Assembly: GCA_002269645.1 (NCBI GenBank)
Contig: NIVC01002369.1
Coordinates: 115,847 to 179,846 of the forward strand
DNA: 64,000 bases
Direction: 5' to 3'
Source of the DNA: Macrostomum lignano
Lineage: Eukaryota
Numbering within the stretch: position 1 is the stretch's first letter; every line of letters begins with the position of its first letter. The notes beneath the pieces are model-generated. The model was not told the origin of the DNA and made no database searches. It worked only from the letters and a program-made list of their open reading frames with translations. A program made the translations under genes and the position numbers. This document shows, piece by piece, positions 14,392-63,068 of this stretch.

Positions 14392-15099
14392 ATGCCCCGG
14401 GTATCTGTCGCCCGCCCCCTTTGTCCCAGGCGATTCTGCCGCACCCTAGCGGCAGCGGCGCAGTACTTGCGTCATGTGCGGTCACACGGAATGGGCTGCG
14501 ACTCGGAGCCAGAGGAGGCGGCTGCGACCAACTCAGAAGCTGTCAGAGCGGCGGTCGAGCAAGTCGCGTCTCACAATGAGTCAGCGATGCAGCCGTGTGC
14601 AGCCGGCAGTTCTGCAGTGATGAAGCGTCACGAGTGTGAGTCAGTCGAGAGGACCCCAGCTTCAAAGAGTGCTGCAACACGACACCGTCGAGCTCAGGGC
14701 ATCGAGAGACCGTTCCAGTGCAAAACTTGCCAGAAGAAGTTCACCAGAAAAAGCTACCTAAAGGCTCACATTAGTGCAGTGCACATAAAGGCGAAACCGC
14801 ACAAGTGCAAGGTGTGCGGCAAGAGATTTAGTGTCAGCAGCAGCCACATTAGGCACTCCAGGGTGCACACAGGAGAAAAGCCATTTGAGTGCAAGGTGTG
14901 CAGAAAGAGATTCAGTCGCCGCAGCAACCTCTCTTCTCACTCAAGACTGCACACAGGAGAAAAGCCGTTTGAGTGCAAGCTGTGCGGCAAGATATTTAGT
15001 GACAGCAGCAACCTCACTAAGCACTCCAGGGTGCACACAGGAAAAAGCCATTCGAGTGCAAGGTGTTATGCAAAAGATTCAGTTAAGGCAGCGATCTGA
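14392..15099 (+). CDS. C2H2 zinc-finger protein, copy ZF1 (most divergent; 4 fingers plus a frameshifted 5th)
   Basis: 235-aa ORF with TGEKPF linkers. Helices RKSYLKA, VSSSHIR, RRSNLSS, DSSNLTK. Polypyrimidine tract and aactgcag acceptor at 14381-14388. First Cys of the N-terminal motif is replaced (ARPLCPRRFC). Confidence 0.85.
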   Translation: MPRVSVARPLCPRRFCRTLAAAAQYLRHVRSHGMGCDSEPEEAAATNSEAVRAAVEQVASHNESAMQPCAAGSSAVMKRHECESVERTPASKSAATRHRRAQGIERPFQCKTCQKKFTRKSYLKAHISAVHIKAKPHKCKVCGKRFSVSSSHIRHSRVHTGEKPFECKVCRKRFSRRSNLSSHSRLHTGEKPFECKLCGKIFSDSSNLTKHSRVHTGKSHSSARCYAKDSVKAAI

Positions 15100-15683
15100 A
15101 AAGGCACTCCAAGCAGCACATTGTTTAATGAATATTAAACTTTGCGCTCCGTGATTGCCACTACGTCTGGGTCCTTACTGTGCGCCAGGCATTTTCAATT
15201 CACTAGCAGTAGATCAGCAGCTTTTTTGGCTGTACGTATTAAGAACTGTCCCAAAAATGTCAATGAAAGCGGATTCAATAGCCAGTTAGTTACAGCATCC
15301 AATGACCTGTTAGTCTCAGTATCTCGGTAACTGATTGGTTTCCAGCATTTTCAGTTTTTCACTTCATTACTTATTGTATTAGTACTCACGCATTTTCAGT
15401 ACTCATTTAAATTCGTCTAACTTTTTACAAACATTCTCTAATCAGAATGTTTTAATCATGATAAATTGCTCATCAGTGTGAATTTTGCCATGCACATCAT
15501 GCCGTTTAGCAGCAACATTTTCACTCGGTTAAATCCATCATCAATTGGTTGTCTTAAATTCAAGTAAAGCATGCATGGGATTTTTATCACTTTCATAAAA
15601 TACAAAATTCTGCTTTAAATTTGTCAATATAACCCAGCAATTGTCTTTATGTTTTCGATATTGGGGATGTTCATTTCCTTTAG

Positions 15684-16769
15684 ATGTCTTTCCGTTTCGG
15701 ATCACAAAGTGACGAAGTCCCTACCGCTCCGCATTGCAGCTCAGGCAGAGACCCGCTTCGAGCATCGGCATCTCCGCACAGATCGCAGCCCCACAGTTTC
15801 TCAGAGATGCGCCGGGGCTCTGTCGCCTGCCCCTTTTGTCCCAGGCGGTTCTGCCGCACCCGATCGGCAGCGGCGCAGTACTTGCGTCATGTGCGGTCAC
15901 ACGGAATGGGCTGCGACTCGGAGCCAGAGAACGAGGCTGCGACCAACTCAGAAGCTGGCAGAGCGGCGGCGGTCGAGCAGGTCGAGTCTCGCAATGAGTC
16001 AGCGATGCAGCCGTGTGCAGACGGCAGTTCTGCAGTGACGAAGAGTCCGGAGTGCGAGTCAGCCGGGAAGACCCGAGCTTTGAACAGTGCTGCAACACGG
16101 CAACGTCAAGCTCAGGCTGTCGAGAGGGCGTTCCAGTGCAACACTTGCCAGAAGAAGTTCACCAGAAAAAGCCACCTCAAAGCTCACATTAGTGCAGTGC
16201 ACAAGAAGGCGAAACCGCACAAGTGCAAGGTGTGCGGCAAGAGGTTCGGTCAAGCATGGAGCCTCACTTCCCACTCAAGGCTGCACACAGGAGAAAAGCC
16301 ATTTGAGTGCAAGGTGTGCGGCAAGAGATTTAGTGACAGCAGCAGCCTCACTAAGCACTCTAGGCTTCACACAGGAGAAAAGCCTTTCGAGTGCAAGGTT
16401 TGCGGCAAAAGATTCAATCAAGCATGCAGCCTCTCTTCCCACTCAAGGCTGCACACAGGAGAAAAGCCATTTGAATGCAAGGTGTGCGGCAAGAGATTTA
16501 GTGTCAGTAGCAGCCTCACTAAGCACTCTAGGCTTCACACAGGAGAAAAGCCTTTCGAGTGCAAGGTTTGCGGCAAAAGATTCAATCAAGCATGCAGCCT
16601 CTCTTCCCACTCAAGGCTGCACACAGGAGAAAAGCCATTTGAGTGCAAGGTGTGCGGCAAGAGATTTAATGTAAGCAGCAACCTCACTAAGCACTCCAGG
16701 GTGCACACAAGAAAAAGCCATTCGAGTGCAAGGTGTTCTGCAAAAGATTCAGTTAAGGCAGCAATCTGA
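15684..16769 (+). CDS. C2H2 zinc-finger protein ZF2 (7 fingers plus frameshifted tail)
   Basis: 361-aa ORF. N-terminal CPFC...HVRSH motif. Helices [49 protein letters not shown]. The true start codon (MSF or MRRGSV) is uncertain. Confidence 0.9.
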
Positions 16770-17089
16770 AGAGGCACTCCAAGCAGCACATTTTTCAACG
16801 AATATTTAACTTTGCGCACCGTGATTGTAGAAATGGACACACGATCTTTGTTTTTCTGTGCTCCAGGCGTTTTCAGTGTACGAGTACTTGCAATCGTTTA
16901 ACAGCTTTTTGTTTCTATGTAATTATGCTTTGTCTTGAATCTTTCCTTTAGGATGCATGAGGAAGTTGATGCACTGATGAGCTGTTGCTGCCAAATGTTT
17001 TCAGTTTTTTCCCAGTAGTCACATTGCGTACTGTACGAATCCTCGGCACTTATGCTACTTCTCGTTTGACTTATTTTAATTTTTGCTTA

Positions 17090-17615: not shown

Positions 17616-17697
17616 GTGTATCGAAGCGTCGGCTTTGAATTAGCTGAGTAGCGACTGAATGATGTATGCGCTTAAGGAGTTAATCGTTAGCTGTGTT

Positions 17698-19023: not shown

Positions 19024-19135
19024 CATGCATGGGATTTTTATCACTTTCATAAAATAAAAAATTATGCTTTTTATTTGTCAATATAACCCAGAAATTGTCT
19101 ATGTTTTCGATATTGGGGATGTTCATTTCCTTTGC

Positions 19136-20077
19136 ATGTCTTTCCATTCCGGATCACAAAGTGACGAAGTCCCTACCGCTCCGCATTGCAGCTCAGGCAG
19201 AAACCCGCTTCGAGCATCGGCATCTCCGCACAGATCGCAGCCCCACAGTTTCTCAGAGATGCGCCGGGGCTCTGTCGCCTGCCCCTTTTGTCCCAGGCGG
19301 TTCTGCCGCACCCGATCGGCAGCGGCGCAGTACTTGCATCATGTGCGGTCACACGGAATCGGCTGCGACTCGGAGCCAGAGGAGGCGGCTGCGACCAACT
19401 CAGAAGCTGGCAGAGCGGCGGCGGTCGAGCAGGTCGAGTCTCGCAATGAGTCAGCGATGCAGCCGTGTGCAGCCGGCAGTTCTGCAGTGACGAAGCGTCA
19501 CGAGTGCGAGTCAGCCGGGAAGACCCGAGCTTTGAACAGTGCTGCAACACGGCAACGTCAAGCTCAGGCTGTCGAGAGGGCGTTCCAGTGCAACACTTGC
19601 CAGAAGAAGTTCACCAGAAAAAGCCACCTCAAAGCTCACATTAGTGCAGTGCACATGAAGGCGAAACCGCACAAGTGCAATGTGTGCGGCAAGAGATTTA
19701 GTGACAGCAGCAGCCTCACTAAGCACTCTAGGCTGCACACAGGAGAAAAGCCATTTGAGTGCAAGGTTTGCGGCAAAAGATTCAATCAAGCATGCAGCCT
19801 CTCTTCCCACTCAAGGCTTCACACAGGAGAAAAGCCATTTGAGTGCAAGGTGTGCGGCAAGAGATTTAGTGTCAGTAGCAGCCTCACTAAGCACTCTAGG
19901 CTTCACACAGGAGAAAAGCCTTTCGAGTGCAAGGTTTGCGGCAAAAGATTCAATCAAGCAAGCAGCCTCTCTTCCCACTCAAGGCTGCACACAGGTGAAA
20001 AGCCATTTGAGTACAAAGACGGGCTTCGAGCATCGGCATCTCCGCACAGATCGCAGCCTGTAATCAGAATGTTTTAA
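19136..20077 (+). CDS. C2H2 zinc-finger protein ZF3 (5 fingers, chimeric C-terminus)
   Basis: ORF is open from 19064; the homologous MSF ATG is at 19136. Helices [35 protein letters not shown], then TGEKPFEY fused to [14 protein letters not shown]. Confidence 0.88.
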   Translation: MSFHSGSQSDEVPTAPHCSSGRNPLRASASPHRSQPHSFSEMRRGSVACPFCPRRFCRTRSAAAQYLHHVRSHGIGCDSEPEEAAATNSEAGRAAAVEQVESRNESAMQPCAAGSSAVTKRHECESAGKTRALNSAATRQRQAQAVERAFQCNTCQKKFTRKSHLKAHISAVHMKAKPHKCNVCGKRFSDSSSLTKHSRLHTGEKPFECKVCGKRFNQACSLSSHSRLHTGEKPFECKVCGKRFSVSSSLTKHSRLHTGEKPFECKVCGKRFNQASSLSSHSRLHTGEKPFEYKDGLRASASPHRSQPVIRMF

Positions 20078-20295
20078 GCATAATGCAGTTTTGTAAATGC
20101 GAGGCAAATATTTGATTTCAAAACTGTTTTTCTTCGTGTATTTTTTAAATTACACTGGTGGCATTGCAATTTTTACTTATTGTTTTTTACGTTTGTCTCG
20201 TTGTGTTGATTTTCTATATTAATTTTAACAATCCACGTGTAGTGCATGTGTCCTTGGTGGTCTGTCAGGGCAGCAGAGTCTCACACTGCTTCTTG

Positions 20296-20793: not shown

Positions 20794-21729
20794 ATGTCTT
20801 TCCATTCCGGATCACAAAGTGACGAAGTCCCTACCGCTCCGCATTGCAGCTCAGGCAGAAACCCGCTTCGAGCATCGGCATCTCCGCACAGATCGCAGCC
20901 CCACAGTTTCTCAGAGATGCGCCGGGGCTCTGTCGCCTGCCCCTTTTGTCCTAGGCGGTTCTGCCGCACCCGATCGGCAGCGGCGCAGTACTTGCATCAT
21001 GTGCGGTCACACGGAATCGGCTGCGACTCGGAGCCAGAGGAGGCGGCTGCGACCAACTCAGAAGCTGGCAGAGCGGCGGCGGTCGAGCAGGTCGAGTCTC
21101 GCAATGAGTCAGCGATGCAGCCGTGTGCAGCCGGCAGTTCTGCAGTGACGAAGAGTCCGGAGTGCGAGTCAGCCGGGAACACCCGAGCTTCAAAGAGTGC
21201 TGCAACACGGCAACGTCAAGCTCAGGGTGTCGAGAGGGTGTTCCAGTGCGACACTTGCCAGAAGAAGCTCACCAGAAAATGCCACCTCAAAGCTCACATT
21301 AGTGCAGTGCACATGAAGGCGAAACCGTACAAGTGCAAGGTGTGCGGCAAGAGATTCGGTTTCAGCAGCGCCCTCACTACACACTATAGAGTGCACACAG
21401 GAGAAAAGCCATTTGAGTGCAAGGTGTGCGGCAAGAGATTCGGTTTCAGCAGCAACCTCTCTTCTCACTCAAGGCTGCACACAGGAGAAAAGCCATTTGA
21501 GTGCAAGGTGTGCGGCAAGAGATTTAGTGTCAGTAGCAGCCTCACTAAGCACTCTAGGCTTCACACAGGAGAAAAACCATTTGAGTGCAAGGTGTGCGGC
21601 AAGCGATTTACTCAAATCTCCAACCTCACTATGCACTCTAGAGTTCACACAGGAGAAAAGCCATTTGAGTGCAAGCGATTTAATCGAGGCAGCCATCAGA
21701 AAACGCACGCTAATCGGCACGTAGTGTAA
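20794..21729 (+). CDS. C2H2 zinc-finger protein ZF4 (5 fingers plus a last finger broken by a 12-nt deletion)
   Basis: ORF is open from 20722. Helices [35 protein letters not shown]. Tail [21 protein letters not shown] lacks VCGK. Confidence 0.88.
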   Translation: MSFHSGSQSDEVPTAPHCSSGRNPLRASASPHRSQPHSFSEMRRGSVACPFCPRRFCRTRSAAAQYLHHVRSHGIGCDSEPEEAAATNSEAGRAAAVEQVESRNESAMQPCAAGSSAVTKSPECESAGNTRASKSAATRQRQAQGVERVFQCDTCQKKLTRKCHLKAHISAVHMKAKPYKCKVCGKRFGFSSALTTHYRVHTGEKPFECKVCGKRFGFSSNLSSHSRLHTGEKPFECKVCGKRFSVSSSLTKHSRLHTGEKPFECKVCGKRFTQISNLTMHSRVHTGEKPFECKRFNRGSHQKTHANRHVV

Positions 21730-22689: not shown

Positions 22690-23164
22690 CTCTCCCTAGC
22701 CACCCTATCACTCACCCAACCCACCCTAAGACTCTCCCTAGCCACCCTATCACTCACCCAAACCACCCTAAGACTCTCCCTAGCCACCCTTTCACTCACC
22801 CAAACCACCCTAAGACTCTCCCTAGCCACCCTATCACTCACCCAACCCACCCTAAGACTCTCCCTAGCCACCCTATCACTCACCCAACCCACCCTAAGAC
22901 TCTCCCTAGCCACCCTATCACTCACCCAACCCACCCTAAGACTCTCCCTAGCCACCCTATCACTCACCCAACCCACCCTAAGACTCTCCCTAGCCACCCT
23001 ATCACTCACCCAACCCACCCTAAGACTCTCCCTAGCCACCCTATCACTCACCCAACCCACCCTAAGACTCTCCCTAGCCACCCTATCACTCACCCAACCC
23101 ACCCTAAGACTCTCCCTAGCCACCCTATCACTCACCCAAACCACCCTAAGACTCTCCCTAGCCA
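22690..23164. repeat. 42-bp satellite, array 1 (11 units)
   Basis: Unit ctctccctagccaccctatcactcacccaa(c/a)ccaccctaaga; (23152-22690)/42 = 11. Confidence 0.97.
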
Positions 23165-23314
23165 TCCTAGGACTCCACTGCCACTCTACCAGTCACCCTG
23201 CTACTCCAATTTTCACCCTACCTACCCTGCTAACTGTTCAGCAACTTCTCTTAACCCATTTCCTCTGCCATTGCACCTTTTTAGAATTTATCCTATTAGA
23301 TGATTTTTTAACTA

Positions 23315-25011: not shown

Positions 25012-25509
25012 ATGTCTTTCACTTCCGGATCACAAAGTGACGAAGTCCCTACCGCTCCGCATTGCAGCTCCGACAGAGACGGGCATCTCCGAACAGATCG
25101 CAGCCCCACAGTTTCTCAGAGATGCGCCGGGGCTCTGTCGCCTGCCCCTTTTGTCCCAGGCGGTTCTGCCGCACCCGATCGGCAGCGGCGCAGTACTTGC
25201 GGTCGGGAACACCCGAGCTTCAAAGAGTGCTGCAACATGGCAACGTCAAGCTCAGGGCATCGAGAGCCCGTTCCAGTGCGACACTTGCCAGAAGAAGTTT
25301 ACCAAAAAAAGCCATATCAAAGCTCACATTAGTGCAGTGCACAAGAAGGCAAACCGTACAAGTGCAAGGTGTGCGGCAAGAGATTCCATGTCAGCAGCGC
25401 CTTCACTACATACTCGAGGCGGCACACAGGAGAAAAGCCATTTGAGTGCAGGGTGTGCAGCAAGATACTAAATAAAGCCAGCATACTGAAGAGGCACTCC
25501 AAGCAGTAG
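25012..25509 (+). pseudogene. ZF5: zinc-finger pseudogene (3 fingers)
   Basis: A ~180-bp deletion removes HVRSH and the acidic linker (gtacttgcg|gtcgggaac). 1-bp deletion in aaggc-aaaccg. Finger 2 has His>Tyr (VSSAFTTY). TAG replaces the last His. Confidence 0.85.
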
Positions 25510-26772: not shown

Positions 26773-27903
26773 ATGCGCCGGGGCTCTGTCGCCTGCCCCT
26801 TTTGTCCCAGGCGGTTCTGCCGTACCCGTTCGGCAGCGGCGCAGTACTTGCGTCATGTGCGGTCACACGGAATGGGCTGCGACTCGGAGCCAGAGGAGGC
26901 GGCTGCGACCAACTCAGAAGCTGGCAGAGCGGCGGCGGTCGAGCAGGTCGAGTCTCGCAATGAGTCAGCGATGCAGCCGTGTGCAGACGGCAGTTCTGCA
27001 GTGACGAAGAGTCCAGAGTGCGAGTCAGCCGGGAAGACCCGAGCTTTGAACAGTGCTGCAACACGGCAACGTCAAGCTCAGGCTGTCGAGAGGGCGTTCC
27101 AGTGCAACACTTGCCAGAAGAAGTTCACCAGAAAAGGCCACCTCAAAGCTCACATTAGTGCAGTGCACATGAAGGCGAAACTGCACAAGTGCAAGGTGTG
27201 CGGCAAGAGATTCGGTTTCAGCAGCGACCTCAATACACACTCTAGAGTGCACACAGGAGAAAAGCCATTTGAGTGCAAGGTGTGCGGCAAGAGATTCGGT
27301 CAAGCATGGGGCCTCTCTTACCACTCAAGGCTGCACACAGGAGAAAAGCCATTTGAGTGCAATGTGTGCGGCAAGAGATTTAGTGTCAGTAGCAGCCTCA
27401 CTCAGCACTCTAGGCTTCACACAGGAGAAAAGCCTTTCGAGTGCAAGGTGTGCGGCAAAAGATTCAATCAAGCAAGCAATCTCTCTTCCCACTCAAGGCT
27501 GCACACAGGAGAAAAGCCATTTGAGTGCAAGGTGTGCGGCAAGAGATTTAGTGACAGCAGCAGCCTTACTAAGCACTCTAGGCTTCACACAGGAGAAAAG
27601 CCTTTCGAGTGCAAAGTTTGCGGCAAAAGATTCAATCAAGCAAGCAATCTCTCTTCCCACTCAAGGCTGCACACAGGAGAAAAGCCATTTGAGTGCAATG
27701 TGTGCGGCAAGAGATTTAGTGACAGCAGCAGCCTCACTAAGCACTCTAGGCTTCACACAGGAGAAAAGCCGTTTGAGTGCATGGTGTGCGGCAAGAGATT
27801 TCATGTAAGCAGCAACCTCACTAAGCACTCCAGGGTGCACACAAGAAAAAGCTATTCGAGTGCCAGGTGTTCTGCAAAAGATTCAGTTAAGGCAGCAATC
27901 TGA
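26773..27903 (+). CDS. C2H2 zinc-finger protein ZF6 (9 fingers plus frameshifted tail)
   Basis: 376-aa ORF from MRRGSV. Helices [63 protein letters not shown]. Confidence 0.88.
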   Translation: MRRGSVACPFCPRRFCRTRSAAAQYLRHVRSHGMGCDSEPEEAAATNSEAGRAAAVEQVESRNESAMQPCADGSSAVTKSPECESAGKTRALNSAATRQRQAQAVERAFQCNTCQKKFTRKGHLKAHISAVHMKAKLHKCKVCGKRFGFSSDLNTHSRVHTGEKPFECKVCGKRFGQAWGLSYHSRLHTGEKPFECNVCGKRFSVSSSLTQHSRLHTGEKPFECKVCGKRFNQASNLSSHSRLHTGEKPFECKVCGKRFSDSSSLTKHSRLHTGEKPFECKVCGKRFNQASNLSSHSRLHTGEKPFECNVCGKRFSDSSSLTKHSRLHTGEKPFECMVCGKRFHVSSNLTKHSRVHTRKSYSSARCSAKDSVKAAI

Positions 27904-50333: not shown

Positions 50334-51748
50334 TCCTAGGACTCCACTGCCACTCTACCAGTCACCCTGCCACTCCAATTTTCACCCTACCTACCCTGCT
50401 AACTGTTCAGCAACTTCTCTTAACCCATTTCCTCTGCCATTGCACCTTTTTAGAATTTATCCTATTAGATGATTTTTTAACTATTAAATAACTTACTAAA
50501 GAATGAAATTGTTTTGATAGTGTTCCAATCACTACCCTTCTCTTATTTAATTTTCACCTACCGAATACTCGTAAACTACAGAGTGGTAAATGCGATTGCT
50601 GTTGTGTAAAACATTTCTCAGAGGCACTTATGCTCAGCTCCCAAGTCCTTCAAGTAATTCTCTCACAGTTTCGACACTTGGCTCCACATGCCAGGCATGA
50701 CTCTGGCAGATGCTTCTTCATAAAAAAACTGCAGGCCTTGCCCGAAATGCGCATTTGGCCTTGAGCACTGCTTTGATGTCGCATTTTGTCCTTTGTTGTA
50801 TTGACTGCTTCCAACTTTCCTTGAGGTCAAGGCACTCTTACTGACTTGCTTTTGCGCTGCAGCAGTCTCCACCGCAAGCATCAATGTTAACGGGCCTTTA
50901 ATAATCAGTTCTTTCACCACGGAGGCATTGCACAGTCCGGCTGGTCTCTTAGAGCTTCTTGCAGAATGTATTCAAATGCCACATCTGTCGCAGTCTCGCA
51001 GTCGGTTCTCAAAATATGCTTATGGGTACTCGTCTTGCTTCGCTACGTTAAACCTGTGACGCTCAGGCACAAGTTTTTGTGAGGTGACAAGCTACTTGAT
51101 TTCATCCTCTAGATTCTCGAATGCATTGACCTCTAGCTTCGCCGGAGGGACCAAGAAGTTCCCTAATTTGTCATACGCGGCTACCACCATGATGAGGCTT
51201 AAAAAGTCAGTCTTGAGTAAGACTCCGTCAACCTTCTCGTCTTTCATGTCCAATTTTCTGCAGACGGCTTCAATCCGCTAAATGCCTCAGAAATTCCTTC
51301 AGTCCAGGGCGACTCCCGCAGGTTCCCTCAAGACAGTGACGCCCTTGTTTTTTCAGTTCGTCCAGAGCCAAACAGACAGAAGTTTCACGATCGTGCTGCT
51401 CAGCTAGCAGTTCTAAATGATAATGTACATGTACATTGACACTCGGCAGCTTAAAACGCGCCGTTTTGTTTAATTTCTTAAACCGCCGTCTCAAATAAGC
51501 ACGCAGAATTGGGAACGCAGAAAGATGATACAGACAGAAACTGGGTCGGTTTGGGGTAGACGTGGCGGGGAGAGGTAAAAATGCACTGCCGGCCTTCCTA
51601 ACCGGGGGCTAAGGATTGCTCATCAATGCAGATGTACCCGGTCACATTGCCGTTTAGCAATAACTTTTCACCCAGTAAAATGTCCATTAAAAATTAGTCT
51701 GTTTACTTTTCTTTAAGACTCAGCTATAAGTGTAGTTCACTTCCTTTT

Positions 51749-52596: not shown

Positions 52597-53862
52597 GTTT
52601 TGTAGAGAATATTCAGTTTCGTGTTATGTGATCGCTGAAATTGACTCCGGATATTTGTTCTTCCTGTGCTCCACGCGTTTTCAATTTATTCGCAATCTCT
52701 TGACAACTTTTTGTTCTTTGTATTAATGATTTTTGTTAAATTTTTCTGAAGAATGCATTAGGAAATTGTTGTTGCACTGATGAGCTGTTGCTGCCAAAGG
52801 AAGTTGATGTTTGCTGTTTTTATAAATTATACCGGTGGCATTGAAGTCTTTGTTTTGTTTTAATATTTGTCTTGATGTTTGTATTATTGTTTTGATATAG
52901 AGATTTTAATAGGCCACGTAAAATGTCGAATGCAGCTGTTGTCATTGGCATGATTGCTCAGCTGTCAGGGCATCGAGCCGGGCAGCAGAGCGGCAGCGAG
53001 ACAGAGAGAACCTCTGAGCCGTGCCGCAGAGTCCTTTGGAAAAAAGTTGAGTTGAGTTGCAGCTAGAATGTAGGTTTTAATGGCTGCCAAGACAGTCAAC
53101 AGGTTGAGCCAAATTACCGTTTCCATGACTGCCCCTCAGCACACCGTTGCCTCTTACACTGATGACTGCACAATCTTATTATTAGAGAATGAATTTGCCT
53201 TCATAATCCTCTTGTTCATTAGTTTCATTAGTAAAATAAGCTATGGAGTTGGAATTTCACTTTTTTGCTTTGCTTAAATGCATTCATGCTAAGCTCCCAG
53301 GTCTAGGGCAGTGGGTTCTCCTTTTTAATTTCCCGAGCCGTCTAAAACGGGTAGACAGCATTTGGAATGCAGCAGAGGGACCGTTGAAACAGAATGGGAA
53401 GGGATGTAACTGGGTGAGTTTGGTGTAGACGCGGCTGAAAGGAGTAAGAGTGCAATGGCAGGCCCTTCTGACGAGTGCCAAGGATTTCTTATCGGTACAG
53501 CAGATGTACCCGGGCACATTCTCGATTAGCAGCAAGATTTTCACACGCTTGAATCTTCATCGAAAATTGACTGTTGCAAATTCAAGTATAGCATGCATTC
53601 TATATTTACATGTATCACTTTCATAGATGTTTATATAAAGTTAGGCTATTTATTTGTTGATGTAACCCAGCTATCGTCTTTATGTTCTCAAAATCAGAAA
53701 GCATACTTGTAGTTTAGTTCTTTTTGATGTTTTCAATCCCAGTTTACAAACGGATCCAACAAGTGATTAAGATAGTCTACTGCTCCACATTCCAGCTTAG
53801 GCAGAGACGGGCCTCGAGCATCGGCATCTCCGCACAGATCGCAGCCCCACAGTTCCTCAGAG

Positions 53863-55110
53863 ATGCGCCGGGGCTCTGTCGCCTGCCCCTTTTGTCCCAG
53901 GCGGTTCTGCCGTACCCGTTCGGCAGCGGCGCAGTACTTGCATCATGTGCGGTCACACGGAATGGGCTGCGACTCGGAGCCAGAGGAGGTGGCTGCGACC
54001 AACTCAGAAGCTGGCAGAGCGGCGGCGGTCGAGCAGGTCGAGTCTCGCAATGAGTCAGCGATGCAGCCGTGTGCAGACGGCAGTTCTGCAGTGACGAAGA
54101 GTCCAGAGTGCGAGTCAGCCGGGAAGACCCGAGCTTTGAACAGTGCTGCAACACGGCAACGTCAAGCTCAGGCTGTCGAGAGGGCGTTCCAGTGCAACAC
54201 TTGCCAGAAGAAGTTCACCAGAAAAGACCACCTCAAAGCTCACATTAGTGCAGTGCACATGAAGGCGAAACCGCACAAGTGCAAGGTGTGCGGCAAGAGA
54301 TTCGGTTTCAGCAGCGACCTCAATACACACTCTAGAGTGCACACAGGAGAAAAGCCATTTGAGTGCAAGGTGTGCGGCAAGAGATTCGGTTTCAGCAGCG
54401 ACCTCAATACACACTCTAGAGTGCACACAGGAGAAAAGCCATTTGAGTGCAATGTGTGCGGCAAGAGATTTAGTGACAGCAGCAGCCTTACTAAGCACTC
54501 AAGGCTGCACACAGGAGAAAAGCCATTTGAGTGCAATGTGTGCGGCAAGAGATTTAGTGACAGCAGCAGCCTTACTAAGCACTCAAGGCTGCACACAGGA
54601 GAAAAGCCATTTGAGTGCAATGTGTGCGGCAAGAGATTTAGTGACAGCAGCAGCCTTACTAAGCACTCAAGGCTGCACACAGGAGAAAAGCCATTTGAGT
54701 GCAATGTGTGCGGCAAGAGATTTAGTGACAGCAGCAGCCTTACTAAGCACTCAAGGCTGCACACAGGAGAAAAGCCATTTGAGTGCAATGTGTGCGGCAA
54801 GAGATTTAGTGACAGCAGCAGCCTCACTAAGCACTCAAGGCTTCACACAGGAGAAAAGCCTTTCGAGTGCAAGGTTTGCGGCAAAAGATTCAATCAAGCA
54901 GGCAGCCTCTCTTCCCACTCAAGGCTTCACACAGGAGAAAAGCCGTTTGAGTGCATGGTGTGCGGCAAGAGATTTAGTGACAGCAGCAGCCTCACTAAGC
55001 ACTCTAGGCTTCACACAGGAGAAAAGCCGTTTGAGTGCATGGTGTGCGGCAAGAGATTTCATGTAAGCAGCAACCTCACTAAGCACTCCAGGGTGCACAC
55101 GAATATTTAA
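53863..55110 (+). CDS. C2H2 zinc-finger protein ZF14 (11 fingers)
   Basis: 415-aa intact ORF. ZF6-type upstream region with the ZF7 finger array. Finger 1 helix is RKDHLKA. Confidence 0.9.
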   Translation: MRRGSVACPFCPRRFCRTRSAAAQYLHHVRSHGMGCDSEPEEVAATNSEAGRAAAVEQVESRNESAMQPCADGSSAVTKSPECESAGKTRALNSAATRQRQAQAVERAFQCNTCQKKFTRKDHLKAHISAVHMKAKPHKCKVCGKRFGFSSDLNTHSRVHTGEKPFECKVCGKRFGFSSDLNTHSRVHTGEKPFECNVCGKRFSDSSSLTKHSRLHTGEKPFECNVCGKRFSDSSSLTKHSRLHTGEKPFECNVCGKRFSDSSSLTKHSRLHTGEKPFECNVCGKRFSDSSSLTKHSRLHTGEKPFECNVCGKRFSDSSSLTKHSRLHTGEKPFECKVCGKRFNQAGSLSSHSRLHTGEKPFECMVCGKRFSDSSSLTKHSRLHTGEKPFECMVCGKRFHVSSNLTKHSRVHTNI

Positions 55111-57433
55111 CTTTGCGCATCGTGATTGTAGAAATGGACACACGATCTTTGTTTTTCTGTGCTCCAGGCGTTTTCAGTGTACGAGTACTTGCAATCGTTT
55201 AACAGCTTTTTGTTCCTATGTAATTATGCTTTGTCTTGAATCTTTCCTTTAGGATGCATGAGGAAGTTGATACACTGATGAGCTGTTGCTGCCAAATGTT
55301 TTCAGTTTTTTCCCAGTAGTCACATTGCGTACTGTACGAGTACTCGGCACTTATGCTACTTCTCGTTTGACTTATTTTAATTTTTGCTTAAAAAATTCTG
55401 CGCACAGTAGGCACGAATATTATAAACTGATAGTTCGGTGATTGTCAGCTTTCTAATTAATGAGTTAGCGAAGTCACAAATTGCCAAAGTTAGGTCGATC
55501 TGTAGTTGTCCGATAGCTTTACAACTTGACCAGAATGCTACTCGGCTGGGTGGCTGAATCACTTGGTGCCCTCCGAGTAACCTGTTTCGATGCACTTTAA
55601 TCGTAGTGCTCATATGCTGTCTTAATTGTGGAATTTTGAAAAAATTGCATGCTTTCGGGAATCGAGTCAAGTTTGGTGTTAGCGTGGCGTTTTGCGAGGA
55701 ATCTTTCTGTTTCTGCTGTTTTGACCTTGAAAGACCTTCCAAGTGCTGTGAGCAGAATGGCGGTCTTCAGCTCGTCGCTTTCATTATCTCGCTTTGCGGC
55801 TGTGAGGGAGAGCGCGAAACCAGCAATTCATGTTTTCACTTCTTCATTTGTTCTCATCGAATGCGATGGATGCTGGTGGCTTCAACTCTCCTGTATCAGC
55901 CAGCCATGTGTATCGAAGCATCGGCTTTGAATTAGCTGTATAGCGACTGAATGATGTATGCGGTTAATGCGGTTAAGGAGTTAATCGTTAGCTGTGTTCC
56001 TCTGACACCATGCTGTTTGTTGTCGTGTTAGTAATGAAATCTCAAATCTATGGGCTTGTGTCTCCGATTAGCGGTTTTTCGAATGAACACGTAAAGAGGA
56101 CGGCTCGAAAATGAAAGTATAGAGCATAGTCGGGAGTGCTCAGTAGTCCCTGTCACAAGCTCTATCTTTCACATTGCGCAAGACAGTACAGTTCATTAGC
56201 ACTTGAGAGAATCCCTAGCTACATAAATATTTTACAATAGAATAATTGCTACCAGCTTCTCCACCATCTAGAAATTGCACCTTTAAACTCCGAGTTGGCG
56301 CGTCAGATTGTAGAAGCATTTGACATCGTGCATTCGTCAAAAATGCTGTCCCAGTAAAGTTCCAATAAGCCGGTCTCTCAGACAGCTGAGAAATGTTTAA
56401 ATTCTGACACCAAATTTCGTTTCGATTGGCTGGCTTTTGAGCTTTCCTCGTCTTAGCCGGTGGGGCCGCCTACCCACCTTTTTTGTTACGGCTTAGTATT
56501 TCGCTCCGGGTTTGCGCATCCACCTTAAATTGTTCAGTCGCGCAAAGTTGCAGTACAAGTGGCAGAAATCAATGGGTCCTGCCAGGCAGTCTAGCGATAA
56601 TTAAAAAAAAACTGTTTATTTTGATTTAGCTAAAACCCCAATCGAAACCCGGTAAAATTGGTTGAGACTGCGGTGTTAAATGATAACAGCACCGATTGAG
56701 TTCGGTTTGATCTGTAAGCGTGCACTGTTCAAACAATTGTTTAACGGCATCGTCGCGTTGCGTACGATATTCAAATATACAACAGGCTTTGCTTCTATTA
56801 ACCAGCCTGTTTTTGAGTCATTCTTTCCCTGAAGCTTGATGGTTCAGGGGTCCTGTATATATAATTTCCAAGGCATCATCACACCAGTATCGGAAGTCAC
56901 GTTGTAAGCTCCTTTGTTGCAGGCCCGCGCGATCCAGGCGGACAAGCTCGAAGCCTTTGATAATGATTTTGGAGGCTGGACGGAGCTTGCTCTCTTAGAT
57001 AGCGGTTTAGGTATATATAAGGCAACTAAAAACTGTTTTATTGTAAATCTATTTTACCGAAGTGAGGACCATGCATTATAGTTGAAATTGTTGGTATCTG
57101 GTCTCCAGTAAAAATTGAATGAGATAATGGAAGAATTGAGCAAAAATCAAGAAAAATTTGTATGTTAGGAAGTTTACCTGGAAGGCTTTGGCTCACTATC
57201 TTTCACGAGCCAAGGATTGCTCATCAGTGTAAATTTAACCATGCACATCATGCCGTTTAGCAGCAACATTTTCACTCTGTTAAATCCATCATCAATTGGT
57301 TGTCTTAAATTCAAGTAAAGCATGCATGGGATTTTTATCACTTTCATAAAATAAAAAATTATGCTTTTTATTTGTCAATATACCCAGAAATTGTCTTTAT
57401 GTTTTCGATATTGGGGATGTTCATTTCCTTTGC

Positions 57434-58467
57434 ATGTCTTTCCATTCCGGATCACAAAGTGACGAAGTCCCTACCGCTCCGCATTGCAGCTCAGGCAGAG
57501 ACCCGCTTCGAGCATCGGCATCTCCGCACAGATCGCAGCCCCACAGTTTCTCAGAGATGCGCCGGGGCTCTGTCGCCTGCCCCTTTTGTCCCAGGCGGTT
57601 CTGCCGCACCCGATCGGCAGCGGCGCAGTACTTGCGTCATGTGCGGTCACACGGAATGGGCTGCGACTCGGAGCCAGAGGAGGCGGCTGCGACCAACTCA
57701 GAAGCTGGCAGAGCGGCGGCGGTCGAGCAGGTCGAGTCTCGCAATGAGTCAGCGATGCAGCCGTGTGCAGCGGCAGTTCTGCAGTGACGAAGCGTTACGA
57801 GTGCGAGTCAGCCGGGAAGACCCGAGCTTTGAACAGTGCTGCAACACGGCAACGTCAAGCTCAGGCTGTCGAGAGGGCGTTCCAGTGCAACACTTGCCAG
57901 AAGAAGTTCACCAGAAAAAGCCACCTCAAAGCTCACATTAGTGCAGTGCACATGAAGGCGAAACCGCACAAGTGCAATGTGTGCGGCAAGAGATTTAGTG
58001 ACAGCAGCAGCCTCACTAAGCACTCTAGGCTGCACACAGGAGAAAAGCCATTTGAGTGCAATGTGTGCGGCAAGAGATTCAGTCAAGCATGGAGCCTCTC
58101 TTCCCACTCAAGGCTTCACACAGGAGAAAAGCCTTTCGAGTGCAAGGTTTGCGGCAAAAGATTCAATCAAGCAAGCCATCTCTCTTCCCACTCAAGGCTG
58201 CACACAGGAGAAAAGCCATTTGAGTGCAATGTGTGCGGCAAGAGATTTAGTGACAGCAGCAGCCTCACTCAGCACTCTAGGCTTCACACAGGAGAAAAGC
58301 CTTTCGAGTGCAAGGTTTGCGGCAAAAGATTCAGTCAAGCAGGCAGCCTCTCTTCCCACTCAAGGCTTCACACAGGAGAAAAGCCGTTTGAGTGCATGGT
58401 GTGCGGCAAGAGATTTCGTGTAAGCAGCAACCTCACTAAGCACTCCAGGGTGCACACGAATATTTAA
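57434..58467 (+). pseudogene. ZF15: ZF8 duplicate with a 1-bp deletion near 57770
   Basis: ORFs 57434..57787 and 57763..58467; tgtgcagcggcag versus tgtgcagccggcag in ZF8. Finger array is the same as ZF8. May be a consensus error. Confidence 0.65.
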
Positions 58468-59477
58468 CTTTGCGCACCGTGATTGTAGAAATGGACACAC
58501 GATCTTTGTTTTTCTGTGCTCCAGGCGTTTTCAGTGTACGAGTACTTGCAATCGTTTAACAGCTTTTGTTCCTATGTAATTATGCTTTGTCTTGAATCTT
58601 TCCTTTAGGATGCATGAGGAAGTTGATGCACTGATGAGCTGTTGCTGCCAAATGTTTTCAGTTTTTTTCCCAGTAGTCACATTGCGTACTGTACGAGTAC
58701 TCGGCACTTATGCTACTTTTCGTTTGACTTATTTTAATTTTTGCTTAAAAAATTCTGCGCACAGTAGGCACGAATATTATAAACTGATAGTTCGGTGATT
58801 GTCAGCTTTCTCTTTGTAGTTGTCCGATAGCTTTACAACTTGACCAGAATGCAACTCGGCTGGGTGGCTGAATCACTTGGTGCCCTCCGAGTAACCTGTT
58901 GCGATGCACTTTAATCGTAGTGCTCATGCTGTCTTAATTGTCGAATTTTGAAAAAATTGCATGCTTTCGGGAATCGAGTCAAGTTTGGTGTTAGCGTGGC
59001 GTTTTGCGAGGAATCTTTCTGTTTCTGATGTTGGTTTTCTCTGCTGCTGTTTTGACCTTGAAAGACCTTCCAAGTGCTGTGAGCAGAATGGCGGTCTTCA
59101 GCTCGTCGCTTTCATTATCTCGCTTCACGGCTGTGAGGGAGAGCGCGAAACCAGCAATTCATGTTTTCACTTCTTCATTTGTTCTCATCGAATGCGATGG
59201 ATGCTGGTGGCTTCAACTCTCCTGTATCAGCCAGCCATGTGTATCGAAGCGTCGGCTTTGAATTAGATTATTAGCTGTATAGCGACTGAATGATGTATGC
59301 GGTTAAGGAGTTAATCGTTAGCTGTGTTCCTCTGACACCATGCTGTTTGTTGTCGTGTTAGTAATGAAATCTCGAAATCTATGGGCTTGTGTCTCCGATT
59401 AGCGGTTTTTCGCATGAACACGTAAAGAGGACGGCTCGAAAATGAAAGTATAGAGCCTAGTCGGGAGTGCTCAGTAG

Positions 59478-59947
<470 letters not shown>

Positions 59948-60933
59948 CGAATATTAAACTTTGCCCTCCGTGGCTGCAGAAGTGAACTTCGGGGTCAGAG
60001 TTCTGAGTGTTCGCCACGCGTTTTTAAGTCACTGGCAATCCATTAACAGCCTTTTTGTCCGTAAATTTTAATGATCATCCTTGAATTGTCCAAAAGTAAT
60101 GCATACCGTATCTAAACCAATGGTCAGTTGATCAGTGTCAGTAGCCACTGATTGGTTTGAAGCATTTTCTGTTTTAATTAAGCACCTTCATTGACTGCAC
60201 TGCTAGACCAGTGTTTAATTCTTGTTGCTGCCAAAGGTTTCAATTTGTTGTTTGCTTCTTATTTCATTATTTTCTGTATTACTCAGCACCCATATTTTAC
60301 GTTTGACTTATTTTACTCCTACAAGAATTTCTGTAATCATTGTTATTATAGTGTCTCCGCGATTGAATTTTGTAAAGACCAAGCTAAAATTTGATCTCAA
60401 AACTTGTTTTTCTTCATGTATTTTCGAATTACACTTGCAGCATGGCAATCTTCACTTGTTATTTTTTTATGTCTGTCTGGATTTGTTGATTTTTATATTA
60501 ATATTAACAAACCACGTGTAGTGCATGGGCCCTCGGGGGTCTGTCAGGGCAGGAGAGTCTCACACTGCTTACGCCGTTAAGTTGCTTACTGCTTACTGCT
60601 TATCCCTCTAGTTAAGGAGACAAAAAGTTATACTTTACAAATTGGTTCTGGTTCTAGAATCAGAACAAGCAATATGAAAAGCCTCTTAAAGGTAAACTTA
60701 ACTTTTTTGATTTGGCCGAAGCACCAATCAAAGTCGGGTAAAATAAGTTGACTCTGTGGTATAAAAGACAATAGTTTAGAGCAATTGCTTCAGCAGCAAT
60801 AGTTTGAGTTTGATAGCTTGATATGTCAGGAGTTCCTTATTTTACGTCTTTTCCTACTTTTCCTATAGTACTTGGGTTGGGCACCGGACCGACCCAGTTT
60901 CTTCACAGGTAAACTGTGGAATGCAGCTGTCTC

Positions 60934-61156
60934 CTCTCCCTAGCCACCCTATCACTCACCCAACCCACCCTAAGACTCTCCCTAGCCACCCTATCACTCA
61001 CCCAAACCACCCTAAGACTCTCCCTAGCCACCCTATCACTCACCCAAACCACCCTAAGACTCTCCCTAGCCACCCTATCACTCACCCAAATCACCCAAAG
61101 ACTCTCCCTAGCCACCCTATCACTCACCCAAACCACCCTAAGACTCTCCCTAGCCA
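60934..61156. repeat. 42-bp satellite, array 4 (5 units)
   Basis: (61144-60934)/42 = 5. Confidence 0.97.
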
Positions 61157-62575
61157 TCCTAGGACTCCACTGCCACTCTACCAGTCACCCTGCTACTCCA
61201 ATTTTCACCCTACCTACCCTGCTAACTGTTCAGCAACTTCTCTTAACCCATTTCCTCTGCCATTGCACCTTTTTAGAATTTATCCTATTAGATGATGTTT
61301 TAACTATTAAATAACTTACTAAAGAATGAAATTGTTTTGATAGTGTTCCAATCACTACCCTTCTCTTATTTAATTTTCACCTACCGAATACTCGTAAACT
61401 ACAGAGTGGTAAATGCGATTGCCGTTGTGTAAAACATTTCTCAGAGGCACTTATGCTCAGCTCCCAAGTCCTTCAAGTAATTCTCTCACAGTTTCGACAC
61501 TTGGCTCCACATGCCAGGCATGACTCTGGCAGATGCTTCTTCATTAAAAAACTGCAGCGCCTTGCCCGAAATGCGCATTTGGCCTTGAGCACTGCTTTGA
61601 TGTCGCATTTTGTCCTTTGTTGAACTGACTGCTTCCAACTTTCCTTGAGGTCAAGGCACTCTTACTGACTTGCTTTTGCGCTGCAGCAGTCTCCACCGCA
61701 AGCATCAATGTTAACGGGCCTTTAATAATCAGTTCTTTCACCACGGAGGCATTGCACAGTCCGGCTGCAAACTGGTCTCTTAGAGCTTCTTGCAGAATGT
61801 ATTCAAATACCACATCTGTCGCAGTCTCGCAGTCGGTTCTCAAAATATGCTTATGGGTACTCGTCTTGCTTCGGTTCGTTAAACCTGTGACGCTCAGGCA
61901 CAAGTTTTTGTGAGGCTACTTGATTTCATCCTCTAGATTCTCGAATGCATTGACCTCTAACTTCGCCGGAGGGACCAAGAAGTTTCCTAATTTGTCATAC
62001 GCGGCTACCGCCATGAGGCTTAAAAAGTCAATCTTGAGTAAGACTCCGTCAACCTTCTCGTCTTTCATGTCCAATTTTCTGCAGACGGCTTCAATCCGCT
62101 AAATGCCTCAGAAATTCCTTCAGTCCAGGGCGACTCCCGCAGGTTCCCTCAAGACAGTGACCCTTGTTTTTTTCAGTTCGTCCAGAGCCAAACAGACAGA
62201 AGTTTCACGATCGTGCTGCTCAGCTAGCAATTCTAAATGATGATGTACATTGACACTCGGCAGCTTAAAACGCGCCGTTTTGTTTAATTTCCCAAACCGT
62301 CTCAAATAAGCACGCAGAATTGGGAACGCAGCAAGATGATACAGACAGAAAAATGAGGCGGTGCAACTGGGTCAGTTTGGGTAGACGTGGCGGGGAGAGG
62401 TAAAAGTGCACTGCCGGCCTTCTTAACCGGGGGCCAAGGATTGCTCATCAATGCAGATGTACCGCGTCACATTGCCGTTTAGCAATAACCTTTCACCCAG
62501 TAAAATGTCCATTAAAAATTACTGTCTGTTTACTTTTCCGTAAGACTCAGCTATAAGTGTAGTTCACTTCCTTTG

Positions 62576-63068
62576 ATGTCTTTCACTTCCGATCACAAAG
62601 TGACGAAGTCCCTACCGCTCCGCATTGCAGCTCCGACAGAGACGGGCATCTCCGAACAGATCGCAGCCCCACAGTTTCTCAGAGATGCGCCGGGGCTCTG
62701 TCGCCTGCCCTTTTGTCCCAGGCGGTTCTGCCGCACCCGATCGGCAGCGGCGCAGTACTTGCGGTCGGAACACCCGAGCTTCAAAGAGTGCTGCAACATG
62801 GCAACGTCAAGCTCAGGGCATCGAGAGCCCGTTCCAGTGCGATACTTGCCAGAAGAAGTTTACCAAAAAAGCCATATCAAAGCTCACATTAGTGCAGTGC
62901 ACAGAAGGCAAACCGTACAAGTGCAAGGTGTGCGGCAAGAGATTCCATGTCAGCAGCGCCTTCACTACATACTCGAGGCGGCACACAGGAGAAAAGCCAT
63001 TTGAGTGCAGGGTGTGCAGCAAGATACTAAATAAAGCCAGCATACTGAAGAGGCACTCCAAGCAGTAG
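62576..63068 (+). pseudogene. ZF17: ZF5 duplicate (3 fingers) with several extra 1-bp deletions
   Basis: Near-identical to 25012-25509 apart from single-base losses, mostly in homopolymers. Confidence 0.85.

What the first reader, a model, noticed from the sequence alone, without database searches (positions are those of the whole stretch)
14392..63068. 17-copy tandem array of KRAB-less C2H2 zinc-finger genes with combinatorially shuffled finger repertoires
Seen: 17 co-oriented paralogs share one N-terminal region but carry 3-11 fingers drawn from a limited alphabet (DSSSLTK, VSSSLTK, QAxxLSS, FSSDLNT, FSSNLSS, RRSNLTx, HRSNLTS, QISNLTM and others) in different orders. Known: vertebrate KRAB-ZNF clusters and PRDM9 diversify DNA specificity this way, by tandem duplication and 84-bp repeat recombination. 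Inference: this is an independent, lineage-specific variable DNA-recognition repertoire, possibly for TE surveillance, and it lacks any KRAB, SET, BTB or ZAD domain I can recognise.
Basis: partly seen in the sequence, partly recalled or inferred. Interest (0 to 1): 0.85.

Follow-up and report, generated by a model that had tools for sequence, protein, structure and literature searches.

The report
Flatworm-specific tandem zinc-finger gene cluster

Summary
The window is the last 64 kb of contig NIVC01002369.1 of the Macrostomum lignano Mlig_3_7 assembly. It carries 17 co-oriented copies of an intronless poly-C2H2 zinc-finger gene: 92 fingers, all on the + strand, 28 distinct recognition helices. 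All copies share an about 110-aa N-terminal region with no KRAB, SET, BTB, SCAN or ZAD match. A profile search of 1.84 billion representative proteins found that region only in M. lignano.

Variation sits in the DNA-contacting helix codons (dN/dS about 1.0-1.45) and not in the scaffold (0.06). Arrays differ by whole 84- or 168-bp units.

The picture needs three corrections:
- Only 8 copies have an intact reading frame. Four carry a shared 175-bp deletion, two are 5'-truncated and three have a single 1-bp indel that may be assembly error.
- Several copies are near-identical members of a 22.85-kb higher-order repeat.
- The array runs into the contig end in a polyploid genome whose scaffolds are often chimeric, so "17" depends on the assembly.

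Four copies have RNA-derived GenBank gene models. Three of these models start 1 nt after a conserved AG acceptor, which suggests spliced-leader trans-splicing.

A role in transposon surveillance is untested analogy. I class this as a new member of a known kind, of moderate interest.

The parts
14392..15099 (+). c1: intact ORF of 235 aa. The N-terminal variant has lost the first Cys of the atypical finger. Finger 1 plus 3 canonical fingers. The unit is 5'-truncated where the array begins.
   Evidence: GenBank model PAA58494 (Mlig012179g1)
15740..16769 (+). c2: reference copy. The mRNA starts after the AG acceptor at 15738-15739. CDS from Met 15807 to 16769 (320 aa), finger 1 plus 6 fingers.
   Evidence: GenBank model PAA58495 (Mlig012179g2)
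19259..20077 (+). c3: open frame of 272 aa, finger 1 plus 4 fingers. The array is cut at 20013 and fused to a 45-bp fragment of the 5' region and a deleted spacer.
20917..21729 (+). c4: intact ORF of 270 aa, finger 1 plus 4 fingers plus a degenerate last finger.
25012..25500 (+). c5: type-B pseudogene with a 13-bp deletion, the 175-bp deletion and a 1-bp deletion. Only finger 1 fits the motif. The next unit has lost a zinc-binding His (His to Tyr).
26773..27903 (+). c6: intact ORF of 376 aa, finger 1 plus 8 fingers. Type-C 5' region (different sequence upstream, same CAG acceptor at 26705).
30890..32259 (+). c7: 11-finger copy with a 1-bp deletion in an A-run inside finger 1 (31372). Either a pseudogene or an assembly error.
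34705..35616 (+). c8: intact ORF of 303 aa, finger 1 plus 6 fingers.
36616..37099 (+). c9: 5'-truncated copy that starts inside finger 1, with no N-terminal region. One broken and 3 good fingers.
41660..42233 (+). c10: type-B pseudogene with a 17-bp insertion, the 175-bp deletion and a 1-bp deletion.
43425..44666 (+). c11: near-copy of c6 carrying the same 1-bp A-run deletion as c7 (43896).
47231..48055 (+). c12: intact ORF of 274 aa, finger 1 plus 5 fingers.
   Evidence: annotated gene 47165-48055, P0007
51749..52558 (+). c13: type-B pseudogene with the 175-bp deletion and a net frameshift. It keeps 4 good fingers (RRSNLTA, YSYSFTS, HRSNLTS x2).
   Evidence: the same lesion is present in L006
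53863..55110 (+). c14: intact ORF of 415 aa, finger 1 plus 10 fingers. Four 84-bp units (54448-54783) are 100% identical.
   Evidence: GenBank model PAA58497 starts at 53797
57434..58467 (+). c15: near-copy of c8 with a 1-bp deletion at 57771. The matching copy on contig NIVC01004840.1 is intact.
59466..59957 (+). c16: 5'-truncated, frameshifted near-copy of c9.
62576..63068 (+). c17: degenerate type-B pseudogene, the last copy before the contig end.
30927..37975 (+). Higher-order repeat block A (c7-c9). It is 99.2% identical to 53777-60843 at a 22,850-bp offset.
53777..60843 (+). Higher-order repeat block A' (c14-c16).
22690..23188 (+). 42-bp C-rich minisatellite, 11.4 copies, upstream of type-B copy c5.
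38247..40229 (+). 42-bp minisatellite, 46 copies, upstream of c10.
49227..50357 (+). 42-bp minisatellite, 26 copies, upstream of c13.
60934..61167 (+). 42-bp minisatellite, 5.4 copies, upstream of c17.

Best explanation
This is part of a young tandem cluster of intronless poly-C2H2 zinc-finger genes, so far found only in Macrostomum lignano.

Protein layout:
- An orphan N-terminal region of about 110 aa. It holds one atypical C-x2-C-x16-H-x3-H finger, then an acidic segment that is probably disordered.
- A conserved first finger with H-x4-H spacing.
- Then 3-10 canonical 28-residue fingers joined by TGEKP linkers.

How the cluster grows and changes (shown):
- Whole gene-plus-spacer units of 1.7-4.2 kb duplicate.
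- A 22.85-kb multi-gene block duplicates.
- Inside genes, in-register unequal exchange adds or removes 84- or 168-bp finger units.
- Selection holds the zinc-binding scaffold and linker fixed, while the base-contacting helix positions change freely or adaptively.
- About half of the copies have decayed into pseudogenes.

Expression (partly shown, partly inferred): four copies have RNA-derived gene models. The transcripts probably mature by spliced-leader trans-splicing at a conserved AG acceptor 67 nt upstream of the start codon, possibly from multi-gene precursor RNAs.

Function (inferred): the intact proteins are sequence-specific DNA-binding regulators with diverging specificities. Targeting of repeats or transposons, as for KZNF and FiNZ genes, is plausible by analogy only.
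For: Organism and locus:
- The window is 100% identical to NIVC01002369.1 of GCA_002269645.1 and ends at the contig end.

Seventeen units, one strand:
-.

Orphan N-terminus:
- No Pfam domain.
- PDB sequence search gives only weak single-finger hits.
- The exhaustive profile search gives 6 hits, all M. lignano.

Selection pattern in the fingers:
- Entropy is concentrated at finger positions 9-13 and 15-16.
- Nei-Gojobori dN/dS is 0.064 for the scaffold and 0.99-1.45 for helix codons.
- Fingers with the same helix share 95.4% scaffold DNA identity, against 86.7% for fingers with different helices, so finger types are lineages reused at different positions.

Unit gain and loss:
- Four identical 84-bp units lie in c14.
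- Tandem Repeats Finder reports 168-bp periodicity.
- Related arrays on contigs L003, L004, L006 and L007 differ by whole fingers at syntenic genes.

Higher-order repeat:
-.

Expression and trans-splicing:
- GenBank models derive from RNA-seq, with ends cut at SL-read peaks by the TBONE pipeline (PMC5730564).
- Models for c2, c12 and c14 start 1 nt after a conserved (T/C)CAG acceptor.

Not a mobile element:
- Spacers have no Pfam domains, no RNA families and no terminal inverted repeats.
Against: - No binding, expression-level or knock-down data exist for any copy. RNA-seq reads map to several copies at 93-99% identity, so expression is shown for the family, not for each copy.
- One GenBank model lacks two fingers and another fuses two genes, so transcript evidence is imprecise.
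- The N-terminal region shows no purifying selection among copies: pN/pS is 1.7 within the window, and there are 1.3 synonymous against 26.7 non-synonymous differences versus a distant copy. This could mean relaxed constraint rather than an effector domain.
- Nine of 17 copies are broken.
- Recognition helices are Ser-rich and of low predicted information content (my reading of the helices, not computed).
- Copy number and the 99.2% block duplication could be inflated by mis-joined subgenome copies. 36% of the assembly length lies in chimeric scaffolds (PMC10733133).
Confidence: 0.8

Rival explanations
1. The family is a dedicated transposon- or satellite-silencing system, a functional analogue of KRAB-ZNF or FiNZ-ZNF genes. 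Diversifying fingers would track M. lignano repeats, and the orphan N-terminus would recruit a silencing cofactor.
For: - Same evolutionary marks as KZNF and FiNZ clusters.
- An orphan, acidic N-terminal region as in FiNZ (PMC10547256).
- Excess amino-acid change in the N-terminus.
- More than half of the host genome is repetitive, with 21% LTR retrotransposons (PMC5730564).
Against: - No target, timing or cofactor data.
- The N-terminal model has low confidence (pLDDT 46).
- Helices are Ser-rich.
- pN/pS above 1 is equally expected from relaxed constraint in decaying duplicates.
Confidence: 0.25
2. The array is largely non-functional. A recently amplified segment is drifting into pseudogenes, and the intact frames are only the youngest copies that have not yet decayed.
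For: - Nine of 17 copies are broken.
- N-terminal pN/pS is 1 or above.
- c3 has a patchwork 3' end.
- Minisatellites and deleted spacers lie between copies.
Against: - Scaffold dN/dS is 0.064 with dS about 0.39 across finger units. This shows long-term purifying selection on zinc-binding and linker residues.
- Several finger strings are identical across related contigs.
- RNA-derived gene models exist for four copies.
Confidence: 0.15
3. Part of the copy number is an assembly artefact. Homeologous (S/L1/L2) or allelic versions of one shorter array were joined head to tail at a contig end.
For: - The array reaches the contig end.
- Blocks A and A' differ by only 27 substitutions in 7 kb.
- Contig NIVC01004840.1 holds the same blocks as a cyclic permutation at 98.8-99.5% identity.
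- 36% of the assembly length lies in chimeric scaffolds, and the genome has three subgenomes (PMC10733133).
- Single-base indels differ between contigs.
Against: - At least 10 distinct finger strings exist in the window, and they cannot collapse into each other.
- A and A' differ by real substitutions, not only indels.
- The cyclic permutation is what a true tandem higher-order repeat predicts.
Confidence: 0.3
4. The zinc-finger ORF is carried by a transposable element, and the array is a nest of element copies.
For: - Related copies occur on at least 7 contigs.
- An LTR-retrotransposon fragment lies 9 kb upstream.
Against: - All copies are head to tail on one strand, with duplicated spacers.
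- No terminal inverted repeats.
- No transposase or reverse-transcriptase ORFs in the spacers.
- The other contigs are syntenic arrays, as expected for homeologs.
Confidence: 0.03

Closest known systems
KRAB zinc-finger gene clusters of tetrapods
   Same: - Tandem, co-oriented clusters of poly-C2H2 genes with 84-bp finger units and TGEKP linkers.
- A conserved scaffold with variable helix positions.
- Gain and loss of whole fingers, and many pseudogenes.
   Different: - No KRAB (PF01352) or SCAN domain.
- The coding region lies in one exon.
- The 5' end is probably made by spliced-leader trans-splicing.
- No TRIM28-type cofactor link is known in flatworms (my knowledge, not tested).
FiNZ zinc-finger genes of cyprinid fish (Wells et al. 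2023, PMC10547256)
   Same: - A lineage-restricted poly-ZF family defined by an orphan, acidic N-terminal sequence with no similarity to known domains.
- Massive tandem amplification.
   Different: - FiNZ is a 28-aa motif in fish with about 700 genes, and it has experimental evidence for transposon repression.
- Here the N-terminal region is about 110 aa and includes an atypical finger.
- The family is small: at least 16 GenBank gene models on at least 7 contigs.
- Nothing is tested. Sequence similarity to FiNZ was not examined.
ZAD zinc-finger genes of insects
   Same: - An N-terminal zinc-binding module ahead of a C2H2 array.
- Lineage-specific clustered expansion.
   Different: - The ZAD profile (PF07776) does not match.
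- The N-terminal module here has C2H2-like spacing, not the C4 ZAD fold.
- The structure model was too poor to compare folds.
PRDM9 zinc-finger minisatellite
   Same: In-register exchange of 84-bp units produces arrays of near-identical fingers that differ mainly at contact residues. One example is the four identical units in c14.
   Different: No PR/SET or KRAB domain. It is a multi-gene cluster rather than one hypervariable gene. No population data are available.

Membership tests
C2H2 poly-zinc-finger proteins (Krueppel type) | Tandem C-x2-C-x12-H-x3-H fingers joined by TGEKP-like linkers | tested here: met
   zf-C2H2 E = 5e-36 and zf-H2C2_2 E = 3.5e-50. There are 81 canonical fingers, and 68 of them have a TGEKPF linker.
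KRAB-ZNF | N-terminal KRAB A/B box (PF01352) | tested here: not met
   The N-terminal 175 aa gives no KRAB hit at E <= 1. KRAB appears only in the vertebrate database hits, not in the M. lignano proteins.
ZAD-ZNF | N-terminal zf-AD domain (PF07776), C4 zinc-binding fold | tested here: not met
   No PF07776 hit at E <= 1. A fold-level test was not possible because the model has pLDDT 46.
PRDM9 / PRDM family | PR/SET domain (PF00856 / PF21549) | tested here: not met
   No SET hit in any window protein.
BTB-ZF and SCAN-ZF | BTB (PF00651) or SCAN (PF02023) domain | tested here: not met
   No hit in the N-terminal query.
FiNZ-ZNF | 28-aa FiNZ motif at the N-terminus; restricted to cyprinid fish | not tested
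The profile search with the flatworm N-terminus returned no fish proteins, which argues against homology.
Lineage-specific tandem ZNF cluster evolving by finger-unit exchange (a kind, not a homology family) | Tandem paralogs; variation focused on helix contact positions; whole-finger gain and loss between paralogs | tested here: met
Lineage-specific tandem ZNF cluster evolving by finger-unit exchange (a kind, not a homology family) | Sequence-specific DNA binding with diverged specificities; a repressive effector function | not testable with these tools
   Needs DAP-seq, SELEX, ChIP and reporter assays.

The most novel reading that the evidence does not exclude
The family is an independently evolved, flatworm-specific repeat-silencing system. 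Trans-spliced, intronless poly-ZF genes would carry a new, rapidly evolving N-terminal effector region and would track M. lignano transposons or the neighbouring minisatellites. That would make it a third or fourth independent invention of the KZNF, FiNZ and ZAD logic, in a model animal with RNAi and transgenesis.
Probability: 0.2. Interest if true: 0.65.

Novelty: new member of a known kind. Interest (0 to 1): 0.4.

Why it matters
Lineage-specific zinc-finger expansions are proposed to be driven by conflict with transposons across animals. Experimental support exists only for tetrapod KZNFs and zebrafish FiNZ genes.

M. lignano has a repeat-rich genome, and RNAi and transgenesis work in it. 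It also offers a small family in which every member shares a conserved N-terminal sequence. That sequence could be targeted to knock down the whole family at once.

If the family silences repeats, it would extend the arms-race model to flatworms and supply a new effector region to dissect. If it does not, this is one more unannotated, partly decayed gene cluster.

Tried and rejected
- AlphaFold2 of the N-terminal region plus finger 1, using a 12-sequence family alignment, gave mean pLDDT 46 and pTM 0.18. This is too poor for fold search, so none was run.
- PDB sequence search of the N-terminus gave only E = 0.3-0.8 hits to single Sp1-type fingers.
- Overlapping-gene explanation for the N-terminal excess of amino-acid changes: the other five frames contain stops and show ordinary pN/pS of 0.6-1.4. 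Rejected.
- The 175-bp gap of type-B copies as a spliced intron or retrocopy: there is no GT..AG, the length is not a multiple of three, and the junction shows microhomology. Rejected; it is a deletion.
- Subtelomeric location: no TTAGGG arrays were found.
- Transposon-borne ORF: no terminal inverted repeats and no domains in the spacers.
- Rfam and tRNA scans found nothing.
- Expression tables: the gene identifiers were found neither in the full text of the library nor in the held supplements of three M. lignano papers.
- The literature search found no description of this family.
- Point-substitution comparison between syntenic copies on different contigs: most arrays are identical, so it gave too few changes to be informative.
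- I did not try to predict binding motifs. The Ser-rich helices make code-based predictions unreliable, and no M. lignano repeat library was available.


Full report
**Where the window comes from**

The best protein matches to the window's zinc-finger ORFs are "hypothetical proteins" of the free-living flatworm Macrostomum lignano, at 76-99% identity. A locus fetched for one of them is 100% identical to window 5741-26769. It places the window at positions 115,847-179,846 of contig NIVC01002369.1 (179,846 bp) of assembly GCA_002269645.1, Mlig_3_7. The window therefore ends exactly at the contig end, and the array is cut off there.

The first 14 kb of the window holds no zinc-finger gene. It has a fragment of a Ty3/gypsy-type pol gene (RNase H plus integrase, 3545-5275, minus strand), a 171-bp tandem repeat, and AT-rich non-coding DNA.

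**Checking the observation**

- A motif scan finds 92 C2H2 fingers, all on the + strand, between 14719 and 59866.
- BLAST with the 84-bp consensus unit finds 90 units, all +, in exactly 17 arrays.
- tblastn with the shared N-terminal region anchors 17 copies, c1-c17.
There are 81 canonical fingers, 28 distinct seven-residue helices and 47 distinct 84-bp DNA units, and DSSSLTK occurs 20 times.
- Finger counts per copy run from 0-1 to 11.

The description and the coordinates are correct.

**State of the 17 copies**

I aligned every copy to the reference copy c2 and walked each array in phase.

| State | Copies | Notes |
|---|---|---|
| Uninterrupted frame from the conserved Met ([11 protein letters not shown]...) to a stop | c1, c2, c3, c4, c6, c8, c12, c14 | c3's array is cut at 20013 and fused to a 45-bp piece of the 5' region and a deletion-riddled spacer |
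| "Type B": the same 175-bp deletion in the N-terminal region, plus further indels and a finger with a lost zinc-binding His | c5, c10, c13, c17 | The junction has microhomology and no splice signals. The same lesion is in an independent contig, so these are true pseudogenes |
| Start inside finger 1, no N-terminal region | c9, c16 | 5'-truncated |
| A single 1-bp indel in a short homopolymer | c7, c11, c15 | The matching copy of c15 on another contig is intact, so these may be assembly errors |

**Higher-order structure**

- Units (gene plus spacer) are spaced 1.7-4.2 kb apart.
- Window 30927-37975 (c7-c9) matches 53777-60843 (c14-c16) at 99.2% (27 substitutions and 13 indels in 7 kb), giving a 22,850-bp period.
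- c5-c6 matches c10-c11 at 97.6%.
- A 42-bp C-rich minisatellite of 5 to 46 copies lies about 1.4-2 kb upstream of every type-B copy.
- Contig NIVC01004840.1 (L006) carries the same blocks as a cyclic permutation (C-A-B against A-B-C-A' in the window) at 98.8-99.5% identity. This is what a true tandem higher-order repeat predicts.
- That contig could equally be a homeologous copy. M. lignano DV1 has three subgenomes, and 36% of the Mlig_3_7 assembly length lies in chimeric scaffolds (PMC10733133).
- The window holds about 10-11 distinct finger strings, and the figure of 17 depends on the assembly.

**Gene structure and expression**

- The coding region has no introns.
- GenBank gene models for this assembly derive from RNA-seq. 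The TBONE pipeline cut their ends at peaks of spliced-leader reads and poly(A) reads (PMC5730564).
- Four models lie in the window: c1 (PAA58494), c2 (PAA58495), c12 (P0007) and a c14+c15 chimera (PAA58497).
- The models for c2, c12 and c14 begin 1 nt after a (T/C)CAG. The regex scan recovered this acceptor in 8 copies, including the type-C copies whose upstream sequence differs.
- I infer a spliced-leader trans-splice acceptor, with translation starting at the Met 67 nt downstream.
- c1 and c2 share one transcript-cluster name although their DNA is under 95% identical. This hints that they were cut from one precursor RNA, but it is inference.
- Transcript evidence is imprecise. The c2 model lacks exactly 168 bp (two fingers) relative to the genome.

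**The N-terminal region**

- Pfam finds nothing in it except a weak single C2H2 match (E 0.019) over [25 protein letters not shown], which has C-x2-C-x16-H-x3-H spacing, and a weaker C5HCH match (E 0.072).
- KRAB, SCAN, BTB, SET and ZAD are absent.
- The PDB sequence search gives only marginal single-finger hits.
- An AlphaFold2 model has pLDDT 46, which is consistent with disorder or with too shallow an alignment.
- A profile of the region was searched against 1.84 billion representative proteins. It returned six proteins, all from M. lignano.
- I cannot tell whether other Macrostomum species are represented in that library, so the supported statement is "found only in M. lignano so far".
- Among copies the region shows more amino-acid-changing than silent differences. 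pN/pS is 1.7 within the window, and there are 1.3 silent against 26.7 replacement differences versus a copy on contig NIVC01000647.1. No alternative frame explains this.
- This fits either adaptive change or relaxed constraint, and the counts are small.

**How the fingers evolve**

- Entropy per finger position peaks at positions 9-13 and 15-16, which are helix positions -2 to +3, +5 and +6.
- Across 38 unique full units, dN/dS is 0.064 for scaffold and linker codons, with dS about 0.39. It is 0.99-1.45 for helix codons.
- The scaffold has therefore been under long-term purifying selection, while contact residues change freely or adaptively.
- This pairwise test on recombining repeats is indicative, not rigorous.
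- Fingers with the same helix share more similar scaffold DNA than fingers with different helices (95.4% against 86.7%). Finger types are therefore lineages reused at different positions.
- Recent unit amplification is direct. Four 84-bp units in c14 are 100% identical, and several arrays show 168-bp periodicity.
- Related arrays on other contigs differ at syntenic genes by whole units. Examples are a 10-finger gene where the window has the 7-finger c2, 3 against 4 canonical fingers for c3, an extra or replaced finger in c4, and a shorter c12.
- Other genes (c6, c8, c14, c12) have identical finger strings across contigs.
- The first finger and the last finger types are fixed. "Unit gain, loss and local amplification" describes this better than free combinatorial shuffling.

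**What it most likely is**

It is a real, young, partly decayed tandem cluster of poly-zinc-finger genes with an orphan N-terminus, so far found only in M. lignano. It shows the same evolutionary marks as the KZNF, FiNZ, ZAD and PRDM9 systems.

The structure, the evolutionary pattern, the taxonomic restriction and the existence of transcript-based models are shown. Trans-splicing, DNA binding with diverged specificities and any role against transposons are inferred.

Wells et al. 2023 (PMC10547256) document such expansions across animals and define FiNZ. They do not mention flatworms in the main text. No paper in the searched library describes this family.

**Verdict**

- Novelty: a new member of a known kind.
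- Interest is moderate (0.4). Clustered lineage-specific ZNF expansions are expected in repeat-rich animal genomes. This one lies in a tractable model animal and has a conserved handle for knocking down the whole family.

Noticed in passing
window 22690-23188, 38247-40229, 49227-50357, 60934-61167: A 42-bp C-rich minisatellite (21-bp sub-period, consensus CTCTCCCTAGCCACCCTATCACTCACCCAACCCACCCTAAGA) varies from 5 to 46 copies. It always lies about 1.4-2 kb upstream of a type-B pseudogene. It produces the strong negative GC skew at 38-40 kb and spurious long ORFs.
   Followed up: partly
window 15807-16136 and equivalents; L002 9941-10480: The N-terminal region has an excess of amino-acid-changing over silent differences. 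Between c2 and the L002 copy, codons 42-150 show Sd 1.3 and Nd 26.7. The other reading frames contain stops, so an overlapping gene does not explain it.
   Followed up: partly
window 15738-15740, 26704-26706, 30944-30946, 41714-41716, 43468-43470, 51803-51805, 53794-53796, 57488-57490: A conserved (T/C)CAG acceptor lies immediately before the 5' ends of the annotated gene models. This suggests spliced-leader trans-splicing, with the start codon 67 nt downstream. The ORF that is open upstream (MSFHSGSQSDE...) is probably not translated.
   Followed up: partly
window 20013-20800: The 3' end of c3 is a patchwork. The finger array stops at 20013, then comes a 45-bp fragment of the gene's own 5' region, then three pieces of the normal spacer with deletions. 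This is a footprint of illegitimate recombination.
   Followed up: yes
window 15741-16769 (PAA58495) and 53797-57747 (PAA58497): The GenBank model for c2 lacks exactly 168 bp (two fingers) compared with the genome. The 507-aa model PAA58497 joins c14 to the 5' part of c15. Repeat collapse or paralog mis-mapping in the transcript assembly is the likely cause.
   Followed up: partly
window 16700-16769, 27840-27903, 44603-44666, 15036-15099: The C-terminal tail ...HT(R/G)KS(H/Y)SSARC(S/Y)AKDSVKAAI* of c1, c2, c6 and c11 is a frameshifted remnant of one more finger unit. Other copies end in HTNI* or in a finger with an internal deletion ([17 protein letters not shown](V/I)V*).
   Followed up: partly
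window 3545-5275 (- strand): A 576-aa ORF carries the RNase H, integrase zinc-binding and integrase core domains. It is a fragment of a Ty3/gypsy-type LTR retrotransposon pol gene, about 9 kb upstream of the array.
   Followed up: partly
window 1313-1968 and 9537-9630: A 171-bp tandem repeat (3.7 copies) and a 13-bp microsatellite (7.3 copies) lie in the repeat-rich flank upstream of the array.
   Followed up: no
L002 (NIVC01000647.1, locus 61-10975): A more divergent branch of the same family (N-terminus 63-78% identical, with different helices such as QGSHLTT, DVSSFTR and YRSNFTR) lies as 3-4 tandem copies directly upstream of an Npa1/NopRA1 gene. The family therefore also occurs outside this array.
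   Followed up: partly
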